From the IMG/VR virus record IMGVR_UViG_3300042922_000643, positions 124,001-188,000 of that record: 64,000 nucleotides of DNA; one strand, given 5' to 3'. This document shows positions 36,485 through 56,135 of this stretch, piece by piece. How positions within the stretch are numbered: the stretch's first letter is position 1; each line of letters opens with the position of its first letter. The notes beneath the pieces are model-generated. The model was not told the DNA's origin and ran no database searches. It saw nothing but the letters and a program-made list of their open reading frames with translations. The translations under genes and the position numbers were made by a program.

Positions 36485-37128
36485 TAGAAATTTCCTCCTC
36501 TATTGAATTTAAAGTCTATTGCTTCTGTATAATGATCTTGGTCACCTGACATTGTAGATCGGAGTTCGACCTTGCCAATAACCTCCTTGATCACCGCGGA
36601 CGGTATCGCAACTTGCTTTTCTAGCCTTACTAGATAAGTGAACTTACGGCAGGTCGCCGACTCTTTTAAAGTCGAACCATTAGCGCCTGTCATCTCTAGG
36701 AAAATCAGCTGGTTCACTCCACGACTCATAAGGTATCCCGTACAAATCGTTATAAGATCTTCGAACTGATTAGCTAGCTTATTTAGCTTTGCATTGTTCT
36801 CTTCCCACACTTCAAAGATGACAGTGTAATCGAATATCTGAGAATAGACATTGATGACTTCCGCATTTTCATCGGCAGCATCAGGAACTCGAAACATCTC
36901 TCTAAATCTAGGTTTTATTTCCTTAACTCCCTTGCCGAATTCACCAGGCACTTTCTTAGAAAGGGCATAAGTAATAATAGGGAATTCAACGTCAGTAGGG
37001 TCAGTTCCATTGGGAAATGCTTCGCAGAATGTGCCCCAGTTTTCGCCCCAAGATTCGTGGAGGATTTTATAGAGCATGTCTGTGAAATCTTCAAAGGAAC
37101 AAGATGATTCTGCTTGTGTTCTACTCAT
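36484..37128 (-). CDS. Tail completion/terminator-type protein
   Basis: Between the two sheath genes; FPIITY...FDYTVIFEVW pattern. Confidence 0.55.
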   Translation of the reverse strand: MSRTQAESSCSFEDFTDMLYKILHESWGENWGTFCEAFPNGTDPTDVEFPIITYALSKKVPGEFGKGVKEIKPRFREMFRVPDAADENAEVINVYSQIFDYTVIFEVWEENNAKLNKLANQFEDLITICTGYLMSRGVNQLIFLEMTGANGSTLKESATCRKFTYLVRLEKQVAIPSAVIKEVIGKVELRSTMSGDQDHYTEAIDFKFNRGGNF

Positions 37129-38675
37129 AGGGAGCCTCCCTTCGAGAAGGGGATAGTAACAGAAGAGGAAACAGAAGCGGCATGAGAGGTGGGAATAAAG
37201 TAGATCATCACATACATTTCCGTGAAGTTGGAGTTGTAGGAGAATTTCACATCATAGCTGCGAATAGAACCAATTCTTGAGTATTCGTTCATAAACTCGA
37301 AGACTCTAGCTTGTGCTCTACTGCGAGATACGGAGGTACTTGCTTCCCCAATGTATGGGTCTAGGTAGTAGACAGCGCGTCTAGCAATTTCATGCACTGT
37401 GCGAACAACATGTGGATAACGAAGCAGAGAATTTTTGTTTTCCGTGGATGCAGTCACTGCGCTGAAAGGGACAAGCCCTTTGCGTACAGAACTCACAATA
37501 GATATATAACCATTAGCGGCCAAATTAGCAATATCTTCTTTGGAAAAAGAATAATTAATTCGTGCTGCTCCTCGTAAACTCTTGTTTGTCATGTTTGTTT
37601 GATGTGAAAGCATTGCCTGGGTTCCCGCATAAGAGTAGGCAAGGCTGAGTAGTTTTGGTGCTTCGGCAAGCACACTAGAGATAAGGACATCTCCTGTAAC
37701 AATTTGAATATGGCTGTAAGGACTAGCTTCGCCATACCCTTCAGTCTCACCAATAGAAGAAGCAAGATCGCCTGCTTTCTTTTGCATCAAGTTCATAGCT
37801 AGGTTATGGATACTTTCTGCCGTTGGATCAATGAGGGGTTTAACTCCTATAACTCCAATGGTCCCCGTATGACTAGTAGAGAACTTGTTATAGCAAAACT
37901 TCGCCAACATCTTTGTATACTCAGCACCATCATCATGAAACATGTCTACTAGACAGGCAACGCCGAAGTCCATTAAGCCGAGTGTGCTATTAGGTTCGAA
38001 GTTTGCTTGGTCCGTAATATCTTCTCCGAAGAGAGCTACGTTCAGCATCGATTCTAACTGCTCTAGCTGCTCCTCAGGGACCTCGGAAGTAAATCTATCA
38101 ACAACTACACTAGCTTCTGTGTCAGCGCCCTGTAGGGCTGCTGTGTAGAGGTGATTCTCATCGAATAATCCCATCTGGAAAGAATGAGAAAGTGATTTAG
38201 CTGTAAACTCGATCAAGCCATACATAGCGTCAATATTAAGAGCATCGGCAAGTAGTGTGGCACTAGGATAGTCCGCAAAATAATAATTACGAATGTCTCC
38301 TCCGCTGCTCGATACAACGAGACGACCATCACCTGCGGAAATGGTGATATTATTACTGTCATCATTAGCAGAAACAGAGTGGAATGACATTACGTCTTCT
38401 CTAGTTCCCATTTCAGTATCTATGTAAGTCAGAGTAGCATCTGCATGTTTACCATTAATACGGTACAATAAGATGCTTGTTACCCCTGTCGAATATGCCA
38501 GATTATAGGCATGAGCCAAGGGGCAGTCTCCGATAATATCAATGACATCAGCACTAGAAGAAAGAGCGAAGGGGGCATGACTTGGCCCATCTTTTGCAAC
38601 GCCAATGAGAATAAGAGTATTCTCTGGGTTAGCTACGGTTTCTACGACTTCGAATTGTGCTTGAGTAGCTGTCAT
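37125..38675 (-). CDS. Second tail-sheath-like protein
   Basis: LILIGVAKDGP...LLYRING N-terminus; LRYPHVVRTV...LDPYIGEA...VMIYFIP sheath C-terminal pattern. Confidence 0.75.
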   Translation of the reverse strand: MTATQAQFEVVETVANPENTLILIGVAKDGPSHAPFALSSSADVIDIIGDCPLAHAYNLAYSTGVTSILLYRINGKHADATLTYIDTEMGTREDVMSFHSVSANDDSNNITISAGDGRLVVSSSGGDIRNYYFADYPSATLLADALNIDAMYGLIEFTAKSLSHSFQMGLFDENHLYTAALQGADTEASVVVDRFTSEVPEEQLEQLESMLNVALFGEDITDQANFEPNSTLGLMDFGVACLVDMFHDDGAEYTKMLAKFCYNKFSTSHTGTIGVIGVKPLIDPTAESIHNLAMNLMQKKAGDLASSIGETEGYGEASPYSHIQIVTGDVLISSVLAEAPKLLSLAYSYAGTQAMLSHQTNMTNKSLRGAARINYSFSKEDIANLAANGYISIVSSVRKGLVPFSAVTASTENKNSLLRYPHVVRTVHEIARRAVYYLDPYIGEASTSVSRSRAQARVFEFMNEYSRIGSIRSYDVKFSYNSNFTEMYVMIYFIPTSHAASVSSSVTIPFSKGGSL

Positions 38676-45130: not shown

Positions 45131-47260
45131 TTACACCTCCTCTTCGGACGGATTAACGTATACGGTACATGTGCAGTTCGTATGGTGTGGTGGAATTGCA
45201 TCCATCAAGTCAGGCTGGTTCAATGTGATAGGATGACCTGACTTCTCAAGACATGCTTCACAATTTCCTTCGTGCTTGGTGTAAACAAATTCTTTGTCAC
45301 TATATTTGGCTGCAATCGCGATACCAAAATTGTAGGCTCGGTAGAGCTCGGTGTTCGTAATAAACTGAAGACGATAAGTATTAGAGTTGAAAACACCCAT
45401 AAGCTTAGATAGTTTCTCTGTAGGGCTTTCTTCATTAAGAGCCTTGAAGATTTGAGTCTTCATTTCGTTTACTAGACGATCTACAAAAGAAGCTGTATAT
45501 TTCTTGAGCTTTTCAGCTTCGAAATATGCTTGTCCAAGAGGCGTGCTGCTCTTCAGCTCACGTACACCTTGGTTCAATCCATAATGGAATGATTGAGTAA
45601 CACTCTTTTCAATCTTAGATCGTAAGTTCTGTTTCACAAGCTGGATAACGAATCCTTCGATTCGGCTTTCCGACTCTCCCGTTTTTGCCATTCTCATGAC
45701 ATCATCACGGAATGCAGACCACATACGAAGTAGATCATTGTGTGTGTCAATGATTTTCAATTCAGTTTGAAGATTAACCATTTGAACGGTATCCGTCAAT
45801 ACGTTTTCCAAAATTTCTGCTTTATTCTCCTTACTGGCCTTTGGAGCGGCTTTACTACGCTTCGGTTTGCCTGGAGAACCTTGCGTTCCACTTTGGTTTG
45901 TCGGCTGATCCTTATTGGTTCCTGCACTATTTGCAGCACTTGCAGCATCTTGAGCTGCCTGCGCACTAAGAGCTGCGGTAACCATATTAAAGTATAGTCG
46001 GCCTTCATCGGATACAGGGTCTTGCCCCATACCTGCACGTAGTTCTTCATGAGTAATCGCATTCTGAGTGAAGAGCTGAACAAGATGATTCTCTTTCTTG
46101 ATCTTGGCATCAAGCTCAATTTCAAGGAGATTGAACACAGCTTCATGTTCTTTATTCGCTACAGGGTCATACCCACCTTCAAACAAAAGCTCATTAATAA
46201 TCTCGCGCTGGACTGTATTCCTTAGTACGGATTGGAATTCTTTCGTACCATCGATCATTTCCGCAGTGAGGTTATCTGCTGTTCCTGTAGACACACCACC
46301 GATACCCATTACAACATCGGATACGCCGAGACCAGAGAAAACACGCTGACGGTAGATCTTCATGTACGGTTCCACATTCATAACTGCACTATTACTACTT
46401 ACAACAGTAATATTGTGGCGTTCAGGAACAACGAGTGCCCCATCCATAGGCACACTACGGATTTCGTCACGCAATTCTTCAATTTCTTCAGGTGTTGCTT
46501 CAAATCCTGGCTTATCAAGACCAACCTTATACTGGTAGAGAGGAAACAGATTCCGATAGATCAAACGAGAAACATTATCTTCTACTTGACGAAGCATCTT
46601 AACATCATTAAGAGCAGGCCATACATAAGGTACGCCAAAAGCGCGACCACGCGGTCTTTTATATGCAAAGTGGATAATGTCTTCAGGTTTAAAGTCTATA
46701 GTAGATCCAGTTCCTGCATCTTGCTGATAGGCTGTGATCTTACCTTTTTCATCACGCGAAATCTTGATTGTCCAAGGAGGTAGCACAAAATACCCGTTAA
46801 TCGGCTTCGTACTAGAGTAACCTACAGCCTTAACCCCAGATACGCTAGACGATCCTGATTGTCTCGATTTTACGACGAATGCATTTCCGTACATAACGAT
46901 ATCCTCACAAATCTCTTTTAAGAGGTTGTCGATAGATTGGGAAGTACCTTCTTCAATAAGCTTCAGACGCAGCCATAGATAGTCTGAGATTGCCTCGTCT
47001 TTTGCGGAGACTTCCCAACCTGCTTTCAGCATAAGTTCTGAGTATTTATCAATTGCTCGTTTGACATAAGAGTCCGTATTGTATGCCATCGTAACGATAT
47101 TAAAGTCAACGGGCTGCTCCTCAAAGTCACCGCCGCCACTGCCTTTAATAGGGCTACCTAGTCGTTTGACAGCTACCTTTTTAGGATCTCGCTTTGCGCC
47201 TGAAGCTTCTGTAGAGTAGCCTAGCGCATTTACAATCCTTTGTTTTAACTTGTCGAACAT
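45131..47260 (-). CDS. Portal protein fused to a C-terminal MuF-like domain
   Basis: IVMYGNAFV, IIHFAY...AFGVPYV, GALVVP portal motifs; C-terminal TELYRAYN...CEAC...IPPHHTNCTC. Confidence 0.85.
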   Translation of the reverse strand: MFDKLKQRIVNALGYSTEASGAKRDPKKVAVKRLGSPIKGSGGGDFEEQPVDFNIVTMAYNTDSYVKRAIDKYSELMLKAGWEVSAKDEAISDYLWLRLKLIEEGTSQSIDNLLKEICEDIVMYGNAFVVKSRQSGSSSVSGVKAVGYSSTKPINGYFVLPPWTIKISRDEKGKITAYQQDAGTGSTIDFKPEDIIHFAYKRPRGRAFGVPYVWPALNDVKMLRQVEDNVSRLIYRNLFPLYQYKVGLDKPGFEATPEEIEELRDEIRSVPMDGALVVPERHNITVVSSNSAVMNVEPYMKIYRQRVFSGLGVSDVVMGIGGVSTGTADNLTAEMIDGTKEFQSVLRNTVQREIINELLFEGGYDPVANKEHEAVFNLLEIELDAKIKKENHLVQLFTQNAITHEELRAGMGQDPVSDEGRLYFNMVTAALSAQAAQDAASAANSAGTNKDQPTNQSGTQGSPGKPKRSKAAPKASKENKAEILENVLTDTVQMVNLQTELKIIDTHNDLLRMWSAFRDDVMRMAKTGESESRIEGFVIQLVKQNLRSKIEKSVTQSFHYGLNQGVRELKSSTPLGQAYFEAEKLKKYTASFVDRLVNEMKTQIFKALNEESPTEKLSKLMGVFNSNTYRLQFITNTELYRAYNFGIAIAAKYSDKEFVYTKHEGNCEACLEKSGHPITLNQPDLMDAIPPHHTNCTCTVYVNPSEEEV

Positions 47261-47275
47261 TTTCCTATCACATCC

Positions 47276-48157
47276 CTACATATCGACTCGAATATCTTTG
47301 CGATCTCCTTTGAATTCAAAGCGTACTAGCCCCGTAATGGAAGGAGTTAATGCCTTCATTTCACTATAGCCGCCGTATTCTAAGAAGGAGCCGCACACTG
47401 CAAAGATTCTTCGGTGGGCAACTAGGTTTTCATTTTCTTCATCGAACAGATAGATCAGGTCATCATGCCACATACGTCCGTGTGTGTGTCCTGAGATATA
47501 AAGATCTGCATTAGGTACAATCTTTGCTACTTTTTCAGCAGTATTTGCTCTCGATCCTGAGGTTGCGCCGCCGCCACTGCCATGATAGGCATTGACACGG
47601 TAGGTTTGTGTACCAACATTGAGACGGAAGTAACCCTGATAGCCTACGTATGGAACATTAAGGCGTTCAGCCAGCATTTCCATTGGATTGATACCGATCA
47701 AGTTTGCTACCCGTTCTTCATGGTTACCTGGAAGGATTCCAAGAATTTTACCAGCCTGTGCTAGTGGGCGAAGAATATCTGTCAGAACATTCAACTGTTC
47801 AGGAATATTCATTTCTTCTTCGAACATCGCTGCGCCTACACTGACTTTTGTAGCCGTTTCGCCAAGATCACCATTCAAAATGGTTACACAATTAGGGACA
47901 GAGAGTATGTATTGAACAAATGCTTTAAAGTATGGGATATTACACTGGCGAGATCCAAGATGTACATCGGTAATTGGAACGATAATTAAACCGTCTTTCT
48001 CGAATGCTTCACCGACGAAGTCATATTTGTAAACAAGTTTTCCTTTTCGGACATAAGAATCCCGCACTTGGTAAAACGCTTCTAGTGAATCCTCTGCGGT
48101 GATCGGTTGCAGTCCCATCTTCGCCAAAATTTCTTCCGTCTTCTTCTGAATAGACAT
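47276..48157 (-). CDS. Calcineurin-like metallophosphoesterase
   Basis: DVHLG, NGDLGE, GNHE, HG, GHTH motifs. Confidence 0.9.
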   Translation of the reverse strand: MSIQKKTEEILAKMGLQPITAEDSLEAFYQVRDSYVRKGKLVYKYDFVGEAFEKDGLIIVPITDVHLGSRQCNIPYFKAFVQYILSVPNCVTILNGDLGETATKVSVGAAMFEEEMNIPEQLNVLTDILRPLAQAGKILGILPGNHEERVANLIGINPMEMLAERLNVPYVGYQGYFRLNVGTQTYRVNAYHGSGGGATSGSRANTAEKVAKIVPNADLYISGHTHGRMWHDDLIYLFDEENENLVAHRRIFAVCGSFLEYGGYSEMKALTPSITGLVRFEFKGDRKDIRVDM

Positions 48158-48169
48158 AAAATCCTCCCT

Positions 48170-49594
48170 TTATAACCCCTTATATTTGACAAACTCTTCA
48201 ACCCAACTAGATAACTGGCTATTATTTGGCCATCCCTTTTCTTTCCCGTAGGATATTAGAGACTCAATTATCTGGTAGAGCTGTCTTGCCCCGTCCTTAT
48301 CCACGACTTGCGACAACTTCTGTCGATACAGCTCCGAATCCATATAGTGGATTTTGTGGAAGTCCCCTGATTGTTCGGCGTAGATATTATCCGTCTCTGC
48401 AACACTGTCCATAATGTACGCACCAACCATTTCGAAGGTGGAGTCTTTAGGTGCATCTATTGAATCTAGTAGATCATGGACGCTATTATAGACCTCATTA
48501 CGAAGATGTACGCCCTGAGTCAGGGAGGTGTTTACATTAACTTTGTTTCTGTTACTTGCAATGCCATCAAGATCTGTTTTTGTATTTTGTACCGTATTGA
48601 TTTTCCCATCAATAGAGAGTCTCAATAGTGCCTGTACTTTTCGTAACCCATTTTCGGCAGATTGTCTAGTAATATAAGGAGATAAAATAGAATAAAGAGT
48701 AGAACTTATTTCAGAATCATAGGGTTCATAGCTTGAGAAGTTATTGATTGACGCTACAAGTGACTCTGTATTAGCAGCCTTATACTGTACAAGATCAACG
48801 ACTTCCTTCTTCGTATACAGCTTTCGTTCAATAGAACTTAATATTTTTGCAGATTCTTCGTAAGCATATTCGGCATCGTAATAGTCCGAAGTATCTGGAC
48901 TTGTCATATAAGCTACACGTAGGTCTTCGAAGTTTGCATCGTTTAAATCTTTCGCTGCAATATACTGATCACTTAAAGCTTTTTCAGCGGCCTCGACGAG
49001 TGCGAGTACAGATCCGTTATCAGTCCCAGCTTTCGGAAGGTTTTTGGAATCTACAATCTGTAATAGTAGAGCACTGTTAATGAAGTCTTGCATAGACTGC
49101 CAATCCTGTCCGATAGAGATAATATCTGCATAGAGTTCTCCAGCAATACTACCGTTTACGTCTAGGTAATAGTCGTCAAAGATGTCTTTCAATATATCTC
49201 TAGCTAAAGAATTCTCGCTAAGAATAACCTTTTTATACAAATCAAAAGGAAGCCCATTATTACTGACAGCAACGCCATAGCTTGCGGCAGCTTGTGCTGC
49301 ATCCGTCAGCTTTGCAGTTGGGATCGTAATATAGTCATCCTTTAGCTGGTCATACAGTATTTGTTCAACATCCCGAATCGAATCGATAATTTCCTCTGAC
49401 TTTATCCAAACTTCCACAGTCTCGACGGCCAAAAATGGCGCTTCAACGACAGGAGCTGTAGGGTAGGTATAGCCATTCGGATTAAGAGCGGGTTGCTCAT
49501 ATTGAATCTTAGGTCGATATTGAATTTGATCACGCTCTCGCTGTGTATCAATCCCTGGTCCATTCTTTTCGATAAAGTCCTCCATGAAATTCAC
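48170..49594 (-). CDS. Hypothetical helical, acidic protein (474 aa)
   Basis: Long ORF in operon orientation; no motif recognised. Confidence 0.6.
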   Translation of the reverse strand: MNFMEDFIEKNGPGIDTQRERDQIQYRPKIQYEQPALNPNGYTYPTAPVVEAPFLAVETVEVWIKSEEIIDSIRDVEQILYDQLKDDYITIPTAKLTDAAQAAASYGVAVSNNGLPFDLYKKVILSENSLARDILKDIFDDYYLDVNGSIAGELYADIISIGQDWQSMQDFINSALLLQIVDSKNLPKAGTDNGSVLALVEAAEKALSDQYIAAKDLNDANFEDLRVAYMTSPDTSDYYDAEYAYEESAKILSSIERKLYTKKEVVDLVQYKAANTESLVASINNFSSYEPYDSEISSTLYSILSPYITRQSAENGLRKVQALLRLSIDGKINTVQNTKTDLDGIASNRNKVNVNTSLTQGVHLRNEVYNSVHDLLDSIDAPKDSTFEMVGAYIMDSVAETDNIYAEQSGDFHKIHYMDSELYRQKLSQVVDKDGARQLYQIIESLISYGKEKGWPNNSQLSSWVEEFVKYKGL

Positions 49595-49613
49595 CTGCCC
49601 AATATTATAGTGT

Positions 49614-49740
49614 AAAAAAGCGCAAAGACCCGAGGGAGGGGAGGGGGTTTCCCAGGGGCCTTTGCAAAGGAAAGGGAGGGGAAGAAACTTGCAAGGACGA
49701 ACGCGGCGAGGTAGAGGAAGGAGGGGTTCTCCGTTCTACA
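49614..49740 (-). ncRNA. Candidate ~125-nt small RNA/leader with three C/U-rich (anti-SD-like) tracts
   Basis: Bounded by a sigmaA-type promoter and a GCAAAGGCCC/GGGTCTTTGC stem plus T6. Confidence 0.55.
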
Positions 49741-49745
49741 TTCGC

Positions 49746-49774
49746 AGAATAAGCTATTGATGATAGCCCGTCAA
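49746..49774 (-). promoter_or_regulatory. sigmaA-type promoter with an internal inverted repeat
   Basis: TTGACG-17nt-TATTCT; spacer contains GCTAT-N5-ATAGC. Confidence 0.7.
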
Positions 49775-49781
49775 TACAAAA

Positions 49782-51587
49782 TTACCAAGTTGGTCTTCCT
49801 CGCATCGCATTTCCTGACGAACCACGGGATGCCCAGTTCTCTGTCTGGTTTTTAGCCTTCGAATATCCAAGACGAACTTTCTTTAAAGGAGCTGGTCCTG
49901 GCTCATCCCATTCTGGTTCTTTACTTAATGTATTGGTCCCTCTACCCATGGATAATTCCTTGAGTGGATCGTATTGAACAGTCTTCGCCGAAAACATGGT
50001 ACGAGCGACTTCAATTTGGAAGATCGTATTCGTAAGTTCAGGCATTTCAATTGTAAACGCAAGAAGAGATAGCATGAATGCATCTAGTGCATGCTCATCT
50101 TTATTGGTAAAGGTGGCCTCACCAGTTTTCGCAGCGATCTTTACGACCTGATAGTTTGTCATCTGGCGGAAGACTTCTTCGTCCACTTTGACACTAGGAA
50201 TACGTAACATCCCACGTTCGAGAAGGAGAACGGCCTGGTTAACCATGAATGGCTTGATTGGTTTTCGTTCAAATACACGAGAGATTGGATCTCGAACTTC
50301 ATAAGAGGAACCTAAGTGGATACCTTTAACCTTGTCACCGAGTGCTTTACGAAGCATTTCGATCTGGTATTCACCAGCACCTCGGTCAGGATAGATAAAA
50401 GCGGGGTTGTAAATACGGTCTAGCCTCATAACTTCTTTAACTGCATTGTCGTAGGTGAGTTCACTTTTTGGAATCTCTACACGCTGTATAATACGGAATC
50501 GTCCATCACCTATCCAAATATTGTTTTCTACACGACGAGAATCACTAGGTTCGTATTGAGTAACAACAATCTGAGTTGCTGTTCCGTACTTATCCCAGTC
50601 AATCCCGATGCAGATTGGACCATTATGCTGAGGTGCATTCAAGAAGGGGTAAGAAATACTTGCTGCTTCATCAATAAAGTCCTTGTTGAATACCCCGACC
50701 ATTTCAGTACCAAACTCAGCCAGGATTTCATGTTCATAAGCCATCTGAGTGTACATACCTCTAAGTTCAGCTTCCATGTTCGGATTCCACTCAGGGTTGA
50801 CCATTGTAGGGAAGTAGAATTCTACCCAGCCCTTTGCTGTTTTACGGCGATATTTATCTACATTCTGAAACAACTTTTCTTCCCGATTGTATGTAATAGG
50901 AACTTCTGGACCCAGATTTTCATCGTCGATCTTTCCATCTGCACCAATAATAGCCTCTGGATAGTTCTTAAATTTCTGTTGTGTACAAATATTATAGAAC
51001 ATACCGCGGCGACCCGTAGGTGTGGACGCAGCCATGATTCCGATACGGTCTGGTGCTTCCATGGAAATAGCAAAAATCGTTTCGAAGTCTTTATCAGAAA
51101 GATAATCCATCTCATCAAGATAGAGCCAGTCTGCTTTCTGACCACGCATCGATCCGCCCTCTGCACCTGAACGCGTACCCGCAGTAAAGAGCTTAATACG
51201 AGAATTGTTTTTGAATTTAATAAGATATGGATTTTTCGTCATAGTGTCAACGCTCTGTGCTAAGATCGGGTTATTCTCGATAAACGTTTTCAGCTGATCG
51301 AAAATTTCTCGTGCTTGAGAGTCATAAGGCGTAGCTACTAGACAGGTCGCACCCTTTTTGATATTTTTGCCACCATTACAGGTGAAAGCAACCCACAGCA
51401 TATGTGCTGTCATCGTCCAAGTTTTTCCAATACGTCGGCCACATCGTAGTATTTTACGATGATGGGGGTGCTTGAGAATTTCTTCTTGATACCAGCGAGG
51501 TGGTTCACCCAAGTGATGAGCGGCCCATTTCGCGGGATCAGACATGATCTCAATCATCTCTTCATCATATTTTGTGAATCTAGCCAT
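49782..51587 (-). CDS. terL: Terminase large subunit
   Basis: CGRRIGKT (Walker A), WLYLDEMD (Walker B), ASTPTG, GIDWDK and HALDA nuclease motifs. Confidence 0.95.
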   Translation of the reverse strand: MARFTKYDEEMIEIMSDPAKWAAHHLGEPPRWYQEEILKHPHHRKILRCGRRIGKTWTMTAHMLWVAFTCNGGKNIKKGATCLVATPYDSQAREIFDQLKTFIENNPILAQSVDTMTKNPYLIKFKNNSRIKLFTAGTRSGAEGGSMRGQKADWLYLDEMDYLSDKDFETIFAISMEAPDRIGIMAASTPTGRRGMFYNICTQQKFKNYPEAIIGADGKIDDENLGPEVPITYNREEKLFQNVDKYRRKTAKGWVEFYFPTMVNPEWNPNMEAELRGMYTQMAYEHEILAEFGTEMVGVFNKDFIDEAASISYPFLNAPQHNGPICIGIDWDKYGTATQIVVTQYEPSDSRRVENNIWIGDGRFRIIQRVEIPKSELTYDNAVKEVMRLDRIYNPAFIYPDRGAGEYQIEMLRKALGDKVKGIHLGSSYEVRDPISRVFERKPIKPFMVNQAVLLLERGMLRIPSVKVDEEVFRQMTNYQVVKIAAKTGEATFTNKDEHALDAFMLSLLAFTIEMPELTNTIFQIEVARTMFSAKTVQYDPLKELSMGRGTNTLSKEPEWDEPGPAPLKKVRLGYSKAKNQTENWASRGSSGNAMRGRPTW

Positions 51588-55040: not shown

Positions 55041-56135
55041 CTAAGATCTAGGAGGCACCTTCACCCACAGTTTACGAATCGCATTGTTGTTCATATCCGA
55101 AAACAAATAACCTGATCCGTCCCAAATGAAATCGGTAGGGTTGTCCATTGCAGCTTCGTCTCGAACTCCATCTACGAAACCGAGGCCACCGCCTGCTACA
55201 AGGAATGGATCTTCACTCTGGAAGTCTAAAGCTTTGATCTGGTAATGAACGTTGTCACCAAGCACCCAATAGAGAACCTTGTCATTATCACTCCAGGAAT
55301 CGAGAATCTTTCCTTCATTCGTATCGATATAGGTGAGACTCTTTCTAGGGAAGATTTTTTCATACCATACATATCCTAGTTCAGATGATACTGTTATACC
55401 TAGATCATGAACAAAGAAGTTAGACGCATTTGGATACTCCTTGGGCTCTAGGATCTGTTCGATCTTTCTAGTCGAAGGATCGTAGCTTACAAAGCCATAG
55501 GTATAGTTCTTGCGGAATAGCATCAAGATAAGTTTATCTTTGTAAGACTTCATACGATAAACGTATTCATACTTATTATCCTTCATCCAGGTTTTAATCT
55601 TTTCATCTGCAACGGTTGCTCTCTCGTTTGTATATAGATACACTTTTTCTTCAGAGGAGAAGTATACCTTATCTTTGACCACAGCTACACCTGTCTTAAA
55701 GAACTCGCCTTCTCTAGCGGTGACTGTATTTTTCGTAAGATCTAGCAAGGTTTTAGCTTGATTGTTTTTAACCACTCTAAGTTTCGCGCTCTTCTGTGTT
55801 CCATCTAGGAAATAAATATTCCCTTTGGAATCTGGTGCTGGATACCTAGGATGGTCTAGCATATAGCTGCTTTCACCAACGACACCATTGCCTGCTACCG
55901 TAGTAACTTCTCCATACTCACCATCCGTCTTAATATCAGTAGAAGGGTTATGCTCTGTAACCTTCTCATGCTGCGTATAAGGCACTGTAGCTGTTGCGGT
56001 AGGCGAAGGACTAGGACTGACTGTAACGGACGGCGTAGGCTGTACCATGGCCATCTGAGGGGCTATGGTCTTCTCTACATCTCCACCATGTACCAAGAAA
56101 TTGAACACTAACATTACTATCGCGATTACGCTCAT
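55041..56135 (-). CDS. Secreted/membrane-anchored NHL-repeat beta-propeller protein
   Basis: Hydrophobic N-terminus, Pro/Thr/Ser linker, PRYPAPDSKGNIYFLD and NPTDFIWDGSGYLFSDMNNNAIRK; ATG 56135 after AAGGAG. Confidence 0.75.
   Translation of the reverse strand: MSVIAIVMLVFNFLVHGGDVEKTIAPQMAMVQPTPSVTVSPSPSPTATATVPYTQHEKVTEHNPSTDIKTDGEYGEVTTVAGNGVVGESSYMLDHPRYPAPDSKGNIYFLDGTQKSAKLRVVKNNQAKTLLDLTKNTVTAREGEFFKTGVAVVKDKVYFSSEEKVYLYTNERATVADEKIKTWMKDNKYEYVYRMKSYKDKLILMLFRKNYTYGFVSYDPSTRKIEQILEPKEYPNASNFFVHDLGITVSSELGYVWYEKIFPRKSLTYIDTNEGKILDSWSDNDKVLYWVLGDNVHYQIKALDFQSEDPFLVAGGGLGFVDGVRDEAAMDNPTDFIWDGSGYLFSDMNNNAIRKLWVKVPPRS

What the first reader, a model, noticed from the sequence alone, without database searches (positions are those of the whole stretch)
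49614..49774. Promoter-and-terminator-bounded RNA with three anti-Shine-Dalgarno-like C/U tracts between terL and the next gene
Seen on the minus strand: TTGACG-17-TATTCT, then tracts CCCCUCCUUCC (49716-49726), CUUCCCCUCCCUUUCC (49669-49684) and CCCCCUCCCCUCCCUC (49632-49647), ending in a 10-bp stem plus U6. A rival stem UUGCAAG/CUUUGCAA overlaps the terminator 5' arm, so two folds are mutually exclusive. Known: Bacillota sRNAs such as RoxS/RsaE and RNAIII use C-rich loops to block SD sequences. Inference: a phage-encoded multi-target translational repressor, or an attenuator gating readthrough to the portal and capsid genes.
Basis: partly seen in the sequence, partly recalled or inferred. Interest (0 to 1): 0.68.

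Follow-up and report, generated by a model that had tools for sequence, protein, structure and literature searches.

The report
Conserved anti-Shine-Dalgarno small RNA after terL
Just after the terminase gene of a 251-kb soil Bacillus-type jumbo phage lies a roughly 128-nt structured RNA with exposed C/U-rich "anti-ribosome-binding-site" stretches; it is conserved with compensatory stem changes across a whole clade of related phages, and most likely represses translation, though its targets and even its expression are untested.

Summary

It is not chance. The same element follows terL in all 17 distinct related phage lineages I could fetch: Bacillus phages Edson/WH1 and KLEB27-3, plus metagenomic contigs.

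- **Sequence:** the middle tract (about UCCCUCCCUCUCCCUU) is nearly invariant, while the stems change sequence but stay paired.
- **Homology:** a covariance model built only from six distant relatives finds the window's copy (32 bits, E 2.5e-5). It rejects 80 unrelated loci that carry the exact 16-mer.
- **Promoter:** the hexamers are conserved in six lineages with divergent spacers, and cleanly absent in others, where the RNA would be a terL 3'UTR.
- **Rival stem:** it comes from loss of the family's hairpin H2 in this phage, is not conserved, and has equilibrium probability of 0.01 or less.

Best reading: a new phage family of LhrC/RsaE/"cuckoo"-type small RNAs with several anti-Shine-Dalgarno seeds. 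One conserved candidate target is the ribosome-binding site of the phosphoesterase gene two genes downstream. It matches no Rfam family. No RNA-seq data exist, so expression and targets remain inferred.

The parts
49769..49774 (-). -35 hexamer TTGACG of the RNA's own promoter
   Evidence: The identical hexamer sits at the same place in KLEB27-3, L006, L009, L010 and L029, with divergent spacers.
49746..49751 (-). -10 hexamer TATTCT (TAWTCT in relatives); predicted start about 49739-49742
   Evidence: TTGACG-N17-TAWTCT occurs twice in the 251-kb genome, against 0.55 expected. The start site is inferred, not measured.
49706..49745 (-). 5' hairpin H1. It has an outer stem and an inner GGAG/CUCC helix, and contains tract 1 (49716-49726), which is partly looped and partly paired.
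   Evidence: MFE fold. H1 pairs covary across the family: 10 of 10 pairs show changes on both sides. Mean P(unpaired) of tract 1 is 0.62.
49685..49705 (-). Linker. It holds the palindrome UUGCAA (49689-49694), a remnant of family hairpin H2, which is lost here.
   Evidence: The model-based alignment shows that the window lacks H2. In L006 the equivalent is UUGCUUGC-UUCU-GCAAGUAA.
49669..49684 (-). Tract 2, the single-stranded CU-rich seed (pyrimidine run 49666-49687). It is homologous to the near-invariant family motif UCCCUCCCUCUCCCUU.
   Evidence: P(unpaired) is 0.99. These are invariant or near-invariant alignment columns. The 16-mer is identical in most lineages.
49621..49666 (-). Terminator hairpin H3, an 11-bp outer stem. 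Tract 3 (49632-49647) is displayed in its large loop.
   Evidence: The hairpin alone folds at -23.7 kcal/mol. All 14 H3 pairs show changes on both sides across the family, and many are G-U pairs, which would be C-A mismatches on the other strand.
49614..49619 (-). U6 tail of the intrinsic terminator, the predicted 3' end of a roughly 128-nt RNA
   Evidence: A U run of 5-8 follows H3 in every family member.
49782..51587 (-). terL, the large terminase subunit (601 aa). The RNA lies at its 3' end.
   Evidence: phrog_2 at 1.6e-38 and Pfam Terminase_6N.
48170..49585 (-). Downstream 471-aa conserved hypothetical gene. Its ATG lies only 28 nt after the U run, so there is no room for a promoter of its own.
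   Evidence: Homologues always follow the RNA.
48163..48171 (-). AAAGGGAGG in the ribosome-binding region of the metallophosphoesterase gene (47276-48157). It is the exact complement of CCUCCCUUU in tract 2 and is a candidate target site.
   Evidence: In relatives the motif is AAAGGGAGAG, paired with tract CUCUCCCUUU. This is a lead, not a demonstrated interaction.

Best explanation
This is a gene for a small structured regulatory RNA of a phage-specific family not found in Rfam 15 or in the held literature.

**How it is made.** In this phage it is transcribed from its own sigma-A-type promoter (TTGACG-17-TATTCT). It ends at an intrinsic terminator, giving about 128 nt. It probably also forms the 3' end of terL transcripts. 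In relatives that lack the promoter it would arise only as the terL 3'UTR.

**What it displays.** The RNA is G-poor and exposes C/U-rich UCCC/CUCCC motifs at three places:
- partly in the 5' hairpin;
- in a fully single-stranded central tract;
- in the large terminator loop.

**How it most likely works.** These motifs are complementary to purine-rich Shine-Dalgarno (SD) regions such as GGGAG and GGAGG. The most likely mechanism is base-pairing to the ribosome-binding sites of mRNAs to block translation initiation, as LhrC, RsaE/RoxS, RNAIII and the alphaproteobacterial cuckoo RNAs do. One conserved candidate target is the SD region of the metallophosphoesterase gene two genes downstream in the same operon. 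Other phage or host targets are likely.

**A second role.** Because the terminator sits inside a tightly packed operon, it must also act as a partial terminator that is read through to express the downstream genes.

**Status of each step.** Shown: the sequence features, family conservation, structure covariation and strand. Inferred: transcription, 5' and 3' ends, base-pairing, targets and the direction of regulation.
For: **Real conserved RNA.**
- The element follows terL in all relatives fetched.
- Every individual MFE fold gives the same layout: hairpin, single-stranded tract, terminator with a CU loop.
- Model R1 was built from six distant relatives only. It finds the window copy at 32.2 bits, E 2.5e-5, and all other lineages. 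There is a single copy in the genome.
- 92.8% of cells are paired, against 42-51% when partners are slid. 29 of 32 pairs show changes on both sides, and 0 of 500 shuffles reach this.
- As a negative control, 80 unrelated genomic loci that contain the exact 16-mer all score below 18 bits.
- Abundant G-U pairs fix the strand as terL-sense.

**Independent gene.** The promoter hexamers are conserved in six lineages with divergent spacers. A promoter-terminator pair with nothing else between them points to the RNA as the product.

**Seeds are accessible.** P(unpaired) is 0.99 for tract 2 and 0.75 for tract 3.

[quoted passage not shown] All three bind the SD region of lapB (PMC4132741). Cuckoo RNAs have 2-4 hairpins with variable stems and the anti-SD loop motif CCUCCUCCC (PMC4615179). 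Subclade-A H1 contains that exact 9-mer.

**Candidate target.** The metallophosphoesterase ribosome-binding region is the best partner of tract 2 among neighbouring genes in 13 of 13 lineages. It carries AAAGGGAGAG, complementary to CUCUCCCUUU. In the window both sides differ together (AAAGGGAGG with CCUCCCUUU).
Against: - There is no expression data. No RNA run holds this phage.
- Many family members lack a recognisable promoter, so a purely cis-acting 3'UTR role is possible.
- Target prediction is weak. C/U tracts pair with any strong SD. In this genome the phosphoesterase site ranks only 45th of 351 by duplex energy, and its 9-mer also occurs before another gene.
- The top-ranked phage target, the tail sheath, is not conserved as a target in Edson.
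- The two-tract lineages L023 and L040 lack the phosphoesterase gene yet keep the invariant tract. It therefore cannot be the only target.
- The covariation alignment was fitted to the model's structure, which inflates pair counts somewhat (caveat).
Confidence: 0.5

Rival explanations
1. A cis-acting 3'-end module of the terL transcript. It would be a partial intra-operon terminator that sets the ratio of terL to downstream gene expression. The hairpins and C/U tracts would serve RNA stability or bind a protein, for example a KH- or S1-domain protein or Rho. There would be no trans-acting base-pairing role.
For: - Most lineages (subclade A, Edson, L023, L028, L053) have no recognisable promoter between the terL stop and the element.
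- The element is strictly tied to the terL 3' end in all lineages.
- The downstream genes are packed 12-28 nt apart with no room for promoters, so the terminator must be leaky.
Against: - A conserved dedicated promoter in six lineages is hard to explain if the RNA only matters as part of the terL mRNA.
- Termination or stability alone does not need a near-invariant 16-nt single-stranded tract, or C/U motifs repeated in accessible positions.
- Other terminators in this phage have ordinary small loops.
Confidence: 0.2
2. A transcription attenuator or leader. The promoter would serve the downstream 471-aa, phosphoesterase and portal genes. Alternative folding, or an antiterminator factor, would decide read-through at H3.
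For: - The promoter is followed by a terminator and then by genes with no promoter of their own.
- In the window, Edson and KLEB27-3, the nascent RNA cut before the 3' arm pairs 8-11 nt of the terminator's 5' arm with upstream sequence.
Against: - No such pairing, or only 0-2 nt, is seen in L009, L015, L017, L018, L032, L038 and L053. Where pairing exists, the partner segment differs between lineages.
- In the window the rival stem is a remnant of a deleted hairpin. Its fold is 3.8 kcal/mol worse, with probability 0.01 or less.
- No ligand- or protein-binding motif of a known riboswitch or attenuator is present; Rfam finds nothing.
Confidence: 0.1
3. A decoy or sponge rather than a gene-specific regulator. 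Its multiple CCUCC-like tracts would imitate the 3' tail of 16S rRNA, or would offer an ideal C-rich ligand. The RNA would then soak up SD-bearing mRNAs in bulk, or a host factor that binds C-rich RNA such as Rho or a KH-domain protein.
For: - The 16-nt tract is nearly invariant across phages whose neighbouring proteins share only 25-47% identity. This suggests a universal, conserved partner.
- There are 3-4 sites per molecule.
- H1 contains an internal GGGAGG:CCUCCC helix that resembles an SD/anti-SD duplex.
Against: - Phage mRNAs themselves use strong SDs, so an indiscriminate sponge would also hurt the phage.
- There is no evidence about abundance.
- No partner protein has been identified.
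Confidence: 0.1
4. A DNA-level signal, such as a packaging (pac) or terminase recognition site, or G-quadruplex/H-DNA on the purine-rich strand, that merely overlaps a terminator.
For: - It is adjacent to terL.
- It has repeated polypurine/polypyrimidine tracts.
- The plus strand opposite tract 3 fits a (G3+N1-7)x4 motif (read).
Against: - The stems covary to keep RNA pairing and use many G-U pairs, which are mismatches in DNA on the other strand.
- The tracts are always C/U on the terL-sense strand.
- KLEB27-3 tracts are too G-poor on the opposite strand for a quadruplex.
Confidence: 0.04

Closest known systems
Listeria monocytogenes LhrC1-5 (with Rli22/Rli33 relatives), UCCC-motif sRNAs
   Same: - It is about 110-140 nt and G-poor.
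- It has three redundant CUCCC...UUU(U) sites, placed in a 5' hairpin loop, a single-stranded stretch between the hairpins, and the loop of the intrinsic terminator.
- In LhrC these sites bind the G-rich SD region of targets (PMC4132741).
   Different: - There is no detectable homology; no Rfam hit even at E up to 10.
- It is phage-encoded and single-copy, and tied to the terL 3' end.
- In many lineages it has no promoter of its own.
- Binding, and independence from Hfq, are untested here.
RsaE/RoxS, FsrA and S. aureus RNAIII: C-rich or UCCC-loop sRNAs of Bacillota
   Same: Unpaired C-rich motifs pair with SD sequences to repress translation. This class is summarised in PMC4132741. The details for RoxS come from my own knowledge.
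   Different: - There is no sequence or structure match to those Rfam models.
- Those are chromosomal stress or virulence regulators with known regulons.
Cuckoo RNA family (Rfam ar14/RF02344, CcsR/RSs0680) of Alphaproteobacteria
   Same: - It is a modular series of hairpins with highly variable, compensating stems. The only conserved sequence is an anti-SD-like motif, CCUCCUCCC (PMC4615179).
- Subclade-A members carry that exact 9-mer in H1.
- CcsR RNAs are matured from the 3' part of an mRNA (PMC8034643 is listed; the processing detail is from my own knowledge).
   Different: - Only a sub-threshold Rfam score: 20 bits against a gathering score of 58.8.
- The host phylum differs.
- Here the main conserved motif is single-stranded between hairpins, not in every loop.
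3'UTR-derived sRNAs and partial intra-operon terminators
   Same: - The element is the terminal part of the terL transcript.
- It sits between co-oriented, tightly packed genes.
   Different: In six lineages it also has a dedicated conserved promoter.

Membership tests
Rfam LhrC, RsaE/RoxS and other curated sRNA families | Covariance-model score at or above the family's gathering threshold | tested here: not met
   There were 0 gathering-level hits in the 64-kb window. With E up to 10 on the locus and on five relatives, only ar14 appeared, at about 20 bits against 58.8.
LhrC-type architecture (functional class, not homology) | [quoted passage not shown] | tested here: met
   Shown by the folds of 17 lineages and the unpaired probabilities in the window. 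The definition comes from PMC4132741.
LhrC-type architecture (functional class, not homology) | The sites base-pair with the SD region of target mRNAs and repress translation | not testable with these tools
   Only in-silico duplexes are available. No RNA data exist.
Cuckoo/ar14 family | 2-4 adjacent hairpins, each loop carrying CCUCCUCCC | tested here: not met
   The window has no exact CCUCCUCCC. Its best-conserved motif is single-stranded, not in a loop. The ar14 score is sub-threshold.
Intrinsic (Rho-independent) terminator | A G+C-rich stem followed directly by a U run, conserved in relatives | tested here: met
   The stem is 11 bp at -23.7 kcal/mol and is followed by U6. All 14 pairs covary, and a U run of 5-8 is present in all members. 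Efficiency was not measured, and the loop is unusually large (13-24 nt).
Sigma-A-type promoter | -35 and -10 hexamers at 17-nt spacing, under selection | tested here: met
   TTGACG-17-TAWTCT is conserved in six lineages with divergent spacers. It occurs twice in the genome against 0.55 expected. Activity was not tested.
Terminator/antiterminator attenuator | A conserved alternative helix mutually exclusive with the terminator | tested here: not met
   Folds truncated before the 3' arm were compared across 17 lineages. Upstream pairing of the terminator's 5' arm is absent in many and not homologous in the rest. Its probability in the window is 0.01 or less.
phi29-type packaging RNA (pRNA) | Homology to the pRNA model or structure | tested here: not met
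   There is no Rfam hit of any kind beyond ar14. Only the adjacency to terL resembles a packaging role.

The most novel reading that the evidence does not exclude
The RNA may not be a gene-specific regulator. It could be a mimic of the 16S rRNA anti-Shine-Dalgarno tail that a clade of Bacillus jumbo phages makes together with its packaging genes. Its 3-4 exposed CCUCC-like sites would titrate purine-only SD sequences in bulk, or a host factor that binds C-rich RNA. That would shift translation late in infection towards messages whose ribosome-binding sites contain GGUG and cannot pair with an all-pyrimidine tract. The genes flanking the RNA have such sites.
Probability: 0.1. Interest if true: 0.85.

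Novelty: new variant of a known kind. Interest (0 to 1): 0.62.

Why it matters
Regulatory small RNAs encoded by phages of Gram-positive bacteria are barely known. One recent Listeria phage study explicitly noted the absence of UCCC-motif RNAs in its phage (PMC12282133).

This element is a family-level, covariation-supported RNA. It is absent from Rfam, and nothing matching it turned up in the library of papers I could search. Its position is fixed in the packaging and head operon of a clade of large Bacillus phages.

Three cultured members have known hosts: KLEB27-3, WH1 and Edson. The hypothesis is therefore directly testable. If confirmed, it would show a phage using the same anti-SD multi-seed design as host stress and virulence sRNAs to tune its own operon, host translation, or both.

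Tried and rejected
- **Rfam.** Searches at gathering level and at E up to 10 gave nothing but a sub-threshold ar14 match.
- **Sequencing runs.** Only three soil DNA runs hold the phage, and no RNA run does. I did not use read laying because DNA contigs cannot show a transcript.
- **Related loci.** A single-protein search in viral contigs found nothing. The alignment query gave one distant locus, L005, whose contig begins too close to the gene to show the RNA.
- **Exact 16-mer in 185,579 species genomes.** Hits fell in unrelated taxa at roughly chance frequency, and none fit the model.
- **Gapped pattern in metagenomes.** It returned three low-complexity CT-rich contigs, which I rejected, and one true member.
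- **Cellular homologues.** None was found in 151 sampled genomes drawn from the same taxonomic class as a Paenibacillus genome. This means not found in those searched, not absent.
- **A second copy in this genome.** The weak hit at G000 69,363-69,467 and the nearby C/U tracts are the antisense of ribosome-binding sites of minus-strand genes. The C-skew maximum at 55,235 on the plus strand is the antisense of a coding region.
- **Tail sheath as a conserved target.** It ranks at or near the top in this genome (first, fourth by tract 2 alone) but is not complementary in Edson.
- **terL's own ribosome-binding site as a cis target.** Pairing was weak in most lineages, by an accessibility-blind whole-RNA duplex.
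- **Function of the 471-aa neighbour.** There is no Pfam, PHROG or PDB match, and the Atlas model has low confidence.
- **Literature.** Papers on KLEB27-3 and WH1 are not in the held library.

Full report
**Where the window lies.** The window is bases 124,001-188,000 of a 251,543-bp virus record that is rated complete. Soil metagenomes hold it. Its only GenBank relatives are three large Bacillus myophages: Edson and vB_BceM_WH1 (host B. cereus) and vB_BauM_KLEB27-3 (host B. australimaris). They share about 71% nucleotide identity over parts of terL. The downstream protein shares only 25-31% amino-acid identity with theirs.

On the minus strand the gene order is:
- small hypothetical genes;
- terL (49782-51587; phrog_2 at 1.6e-38);
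- the finding;
- a 471-aa hypothetical protein (48170-49585);
- a metallophosphoesterase, annotated "DNA repair exonuclease" (47276-48157);
- a 709-aa fusion of a portal with a Mu-F-like domain (45131-47260).

**The observation.**
- The 136-nt stretch folds at -39.3 kcal/mol, z = -4.74.
- The stretch is the most C-over-G-skewed 128-nt window on that strand of the genome.
- The promoter match alone is no better than chance: 19 sites found against 18.7 expected.

**The element is a conserved family.** The GenBank relatives have a 150-200-nt gap after terL with the same content. Eight further homologues of the 471-aa protein came from metagenome assemblies, and each has a gap of about 165-220 nt with the same features. 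An exact search for the central 16-mer in IMG/VR added more lineages that were not chosen through the protein: L023, L028, L029, L032, L038 and L053.

Seventeen distinct sequences were folded one by one, and all give one plan:
- **H1:** a 5' hairpin whose inner helix is GGGAG(G)/C(C)UCCC, with C-rich loop residues. It carries no C/U tract in Edson, L023, L028 and L053.
- **Linker:** a short stretch that often contains UCCC.
- **H2:** a small hairpin with an ordinary loop.
- **Tract 2:** a roughly 20-nt single-stranded tract, UCCCUCCCUCUCCCUU or a close variant.
- **H3:** a terminator hairpin whose 13-24-nt loop is again C/U-rich (for example UCUCCCUCCCCUU), followed by U5-8.

**Tests of homology and structure.**
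- I built a covariance model from six subclade-A sequences only (L013, L014, L015, L017, L032 and L038).
- It recovers every other lineage. The window scores 32.2 bits, E 2.5e-5.
- The window's copy is the only significant hit in the phage genome.
- On the resulting alignment, 92.8% of cells are standard pairs. With partners slid by 1-3 columns the figure is 42-51%.
- 29 of 32 pairs have changes on both sides, and no shuffle of 500 reaches the observed values.
- That alignment is fitted to the model, which favours the structure. The independent single-sequence folds agree with it.
- Frequent G-U pairs show that the folded strand is the terL-sense strand.
- As a specificity control, 80 loci from unrelated genomes that contain the exact 16-mer all score below 18 bits.
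- No hit appeared in 151 sampled genomes drawn from the same taxonomic class as a Paenibacillus genome.

**Promoter.** TTGACG-N17-TA(T/A)TCT is present at the same place in the window, L006, L009, L010, L029 and KLEB27-3. The spacers differ in most positions. KLEB27-3 is among the most distant relatives, so the promoter is likely old.

In subclade A, Edson, L023, L028 and L053 the roughly 45-nt promoter module is missing, and H1 starts within about 10 nt of the terL stop codon. In those phages the RNA can only be the 3' end of the terL transcript.

The same promoter type occurs once more in this genome, inside the portal gene (window 45771-45799). It is conserved there in L006 and L009.

**Terminator and the rival fold.** The 471-aa gene starts 28 nt after the U run. 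The next two genes follow at 12 and 15 nt. H3 is therefore an intra-operon terminator that must be partly read through.

The model-based alignment and the closest relative, L006 (UUGCUUGC-UUCU-GCAAGUAA), show that this is what remains of hairpin H2 after an internal deletion.

I folded each RNA truncated before the terminator's 3' arm.
- The 5' arm pairs upstream over 8-11 nt in the window, Edson and KLEB27-3.
- It pairs over only 0-2 nt in seven other lineages.
- Where pairing occurs, the partners are not homologous.

In the window the rival fold is 3.8 kcal/mol less stable than the MFE fold, and its pairs have probability 0.01 or less. A conserved antiterminator is therefore not supported. 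A lineage-specific kinetic effect cannot be excluded.

**Likely mechanism.** In the window, tract 2 is unpaired with probability 0.99 and tract 3 with 0.75. Tract 1 is half paired to its own GGAG.

[quoted passage not shown] There, each site can bind the G-rich Shine-Dalgarno (SD) region of lapB. The UCCC motif is likewise used by RNAIII, RsaE, SprD and FsrA (PMC4132741).

The only Rfam model with any affinity is ar14, at 20 bits against a threshold of 58.8. It belongs to the "cuckoo" RNAs, which have variable hairpins carrying the anti-SD-like CCUCCUCCC (PMC4615179). Subclade-A H1 contains that 9-mer.

I therefore read the element as a new phage family of this functional class, and not as a member of any of those families.

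**Candidate targets.** I scanned all 351 predicted translation-initiation regions of the phage. The highest-ranking include the tail sheath gene (window 37125-38675), first or fourth depending on the scan, and a DnaB-like helicase. The sheath site is not complementary in Edson.

A more consistent signal is the metallophosphoesterase gene.
- Its leader carries a purine-only motif, (A)AAGGGAGAG, immediately after the upstream stop codon, in most of the 13 lineages that have the gene (L009, L010, L014 and L018 carry close variants; the window and Edson differ).
- This motif is the exact complement of the invariant CUCUCCCUU(U) of tract 2.
- KLEB27-3 has an 11-nt match.
- The window has AAAGGGAGG opposite its own variant, CCUCCCUUU.
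- This leader is the best partner of tract 2 among neighbouring genes in 13 of 13 lineages.

There are caveats.
- In the window's genome the site ranks 45th of 351, and the 9-mer also precedes one other gene.
- In KLEB27-3 the 11-mer occurs at two other places.
- L023 and L040 lack the gene but keep the tract.

This is therefore a lead for one target, not the whole answer. The neighbouring 471-aa and portal genes mostly use SDs that contain GGUG, which an all-pyrimidine tract cannot pair with.

**Rivals.** Each is set out, with evidence and a refutation test, under Rival explanations:
- a purely cis-acting 3'UTR or partial-terminator module, possibly protein-bound;
- a leader or attenuator;
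- a bulk decoy of the 16S anti-SD tail or of a C-rich-RNA-binding factor;
- a DNA-level signal.

The conserved dedicated promoter, the accessible repeated motifs and the RNA-type covariation favour a trans-acting RNA. Without transcript data I put this at about 0.5.

**Novelty.** No Rfam family matches. The literature searches available here found no description of it. A 2025 study of a Listeria phage remarked on the lack of UCCC-motif RNAs in that phage (PMC12282133). The kind of RNA, an anti-SD multi-seed sRNA, is known. The phage origin, the fixed terL-3' position, the dual origin from its own promoter or from a 3'UTR, and a possible target within the same operon are new.

**Limits.** There is no expression evidence. 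Targets are predicted only. Promoter-less members might use unrecognised phage promoters. The host of this phage is inferred from its relatives.

Noticed in passing
window 45771-45799 (-); L006 6811-6839; L009 6878-6906: A second TTGACG-N17-TAATCT promoter-like site lies inside the portal gene, between the portal domain and the C-terminal Mu-F-like domain. It sits at the same position in two relatives. Its spacer end (CAAATGGTTAATCT) is identical to that of the sRNA promoter of L029. This suggests a small promoter class shared with the RNA.
   Followed up: partly
window 49782-51587 (-); L014-L017; L002-L004; L053 990-2415: terL is uninterrupted here (601 aa). Relatives carry an intein with a LAGLIDADG endonuclease (terL 975-999 aa). 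In L053 two group I introns (Rfam RF00028, 91 and 56 bits) lie just upstream of the RNA, where terL is expected.
   Followed up: no
window 47276-48172 (-): An SbcD/Mre11-like metallophosphoesterase gene sits between terL and the portal. Its purine-only leader motif AAAGGGAG(A/G)G overlaps the stop codon of the upstream gene and is conserved across lineages. The gene is absent from the two-tract lineages L023 and L040.
   Followed up: partly
window 45131-47260 (-): The portal protein is fused to a Mu-F-like head-morphogenesis domain (Pfam Phage_portal at residues 107-410; Phage_Mu_F at residues 608-700, below the Pfam cut-off).
   Followed up: no
window 49736-49741 (-); L006 about 2836-2841: The predicted 5' end of the RNA carries a start-stop mini-ORF (ATG TAG here, ATG TGA in L006). 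It is not conserved in other lineages and is probably incidental.
   Followed up: no
window 49604-49609 (-): A perfect TATAAT lies just after the terminator, 19 nt before the next gene's ATG. It has no -35 and is not conserved in relatives.
   Followed up: no
window about 49632-49656 (+): The purine-rich strand opposite tract 3 fits a canonical four-run G-quadruplex motif. It is not conserved in KLEB27-3, so it is probably a by-product of the C-rich RNA.
   Followed up: no
window 48170-49585 (-): The 471-aa protein that always follows the RNA has no Pfam, PHROG or PDB relative, and only a low-confidence predicted structure. Its N-terminal GPGID motif is invariant in the four aligned relatives.
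   Followed up: partly
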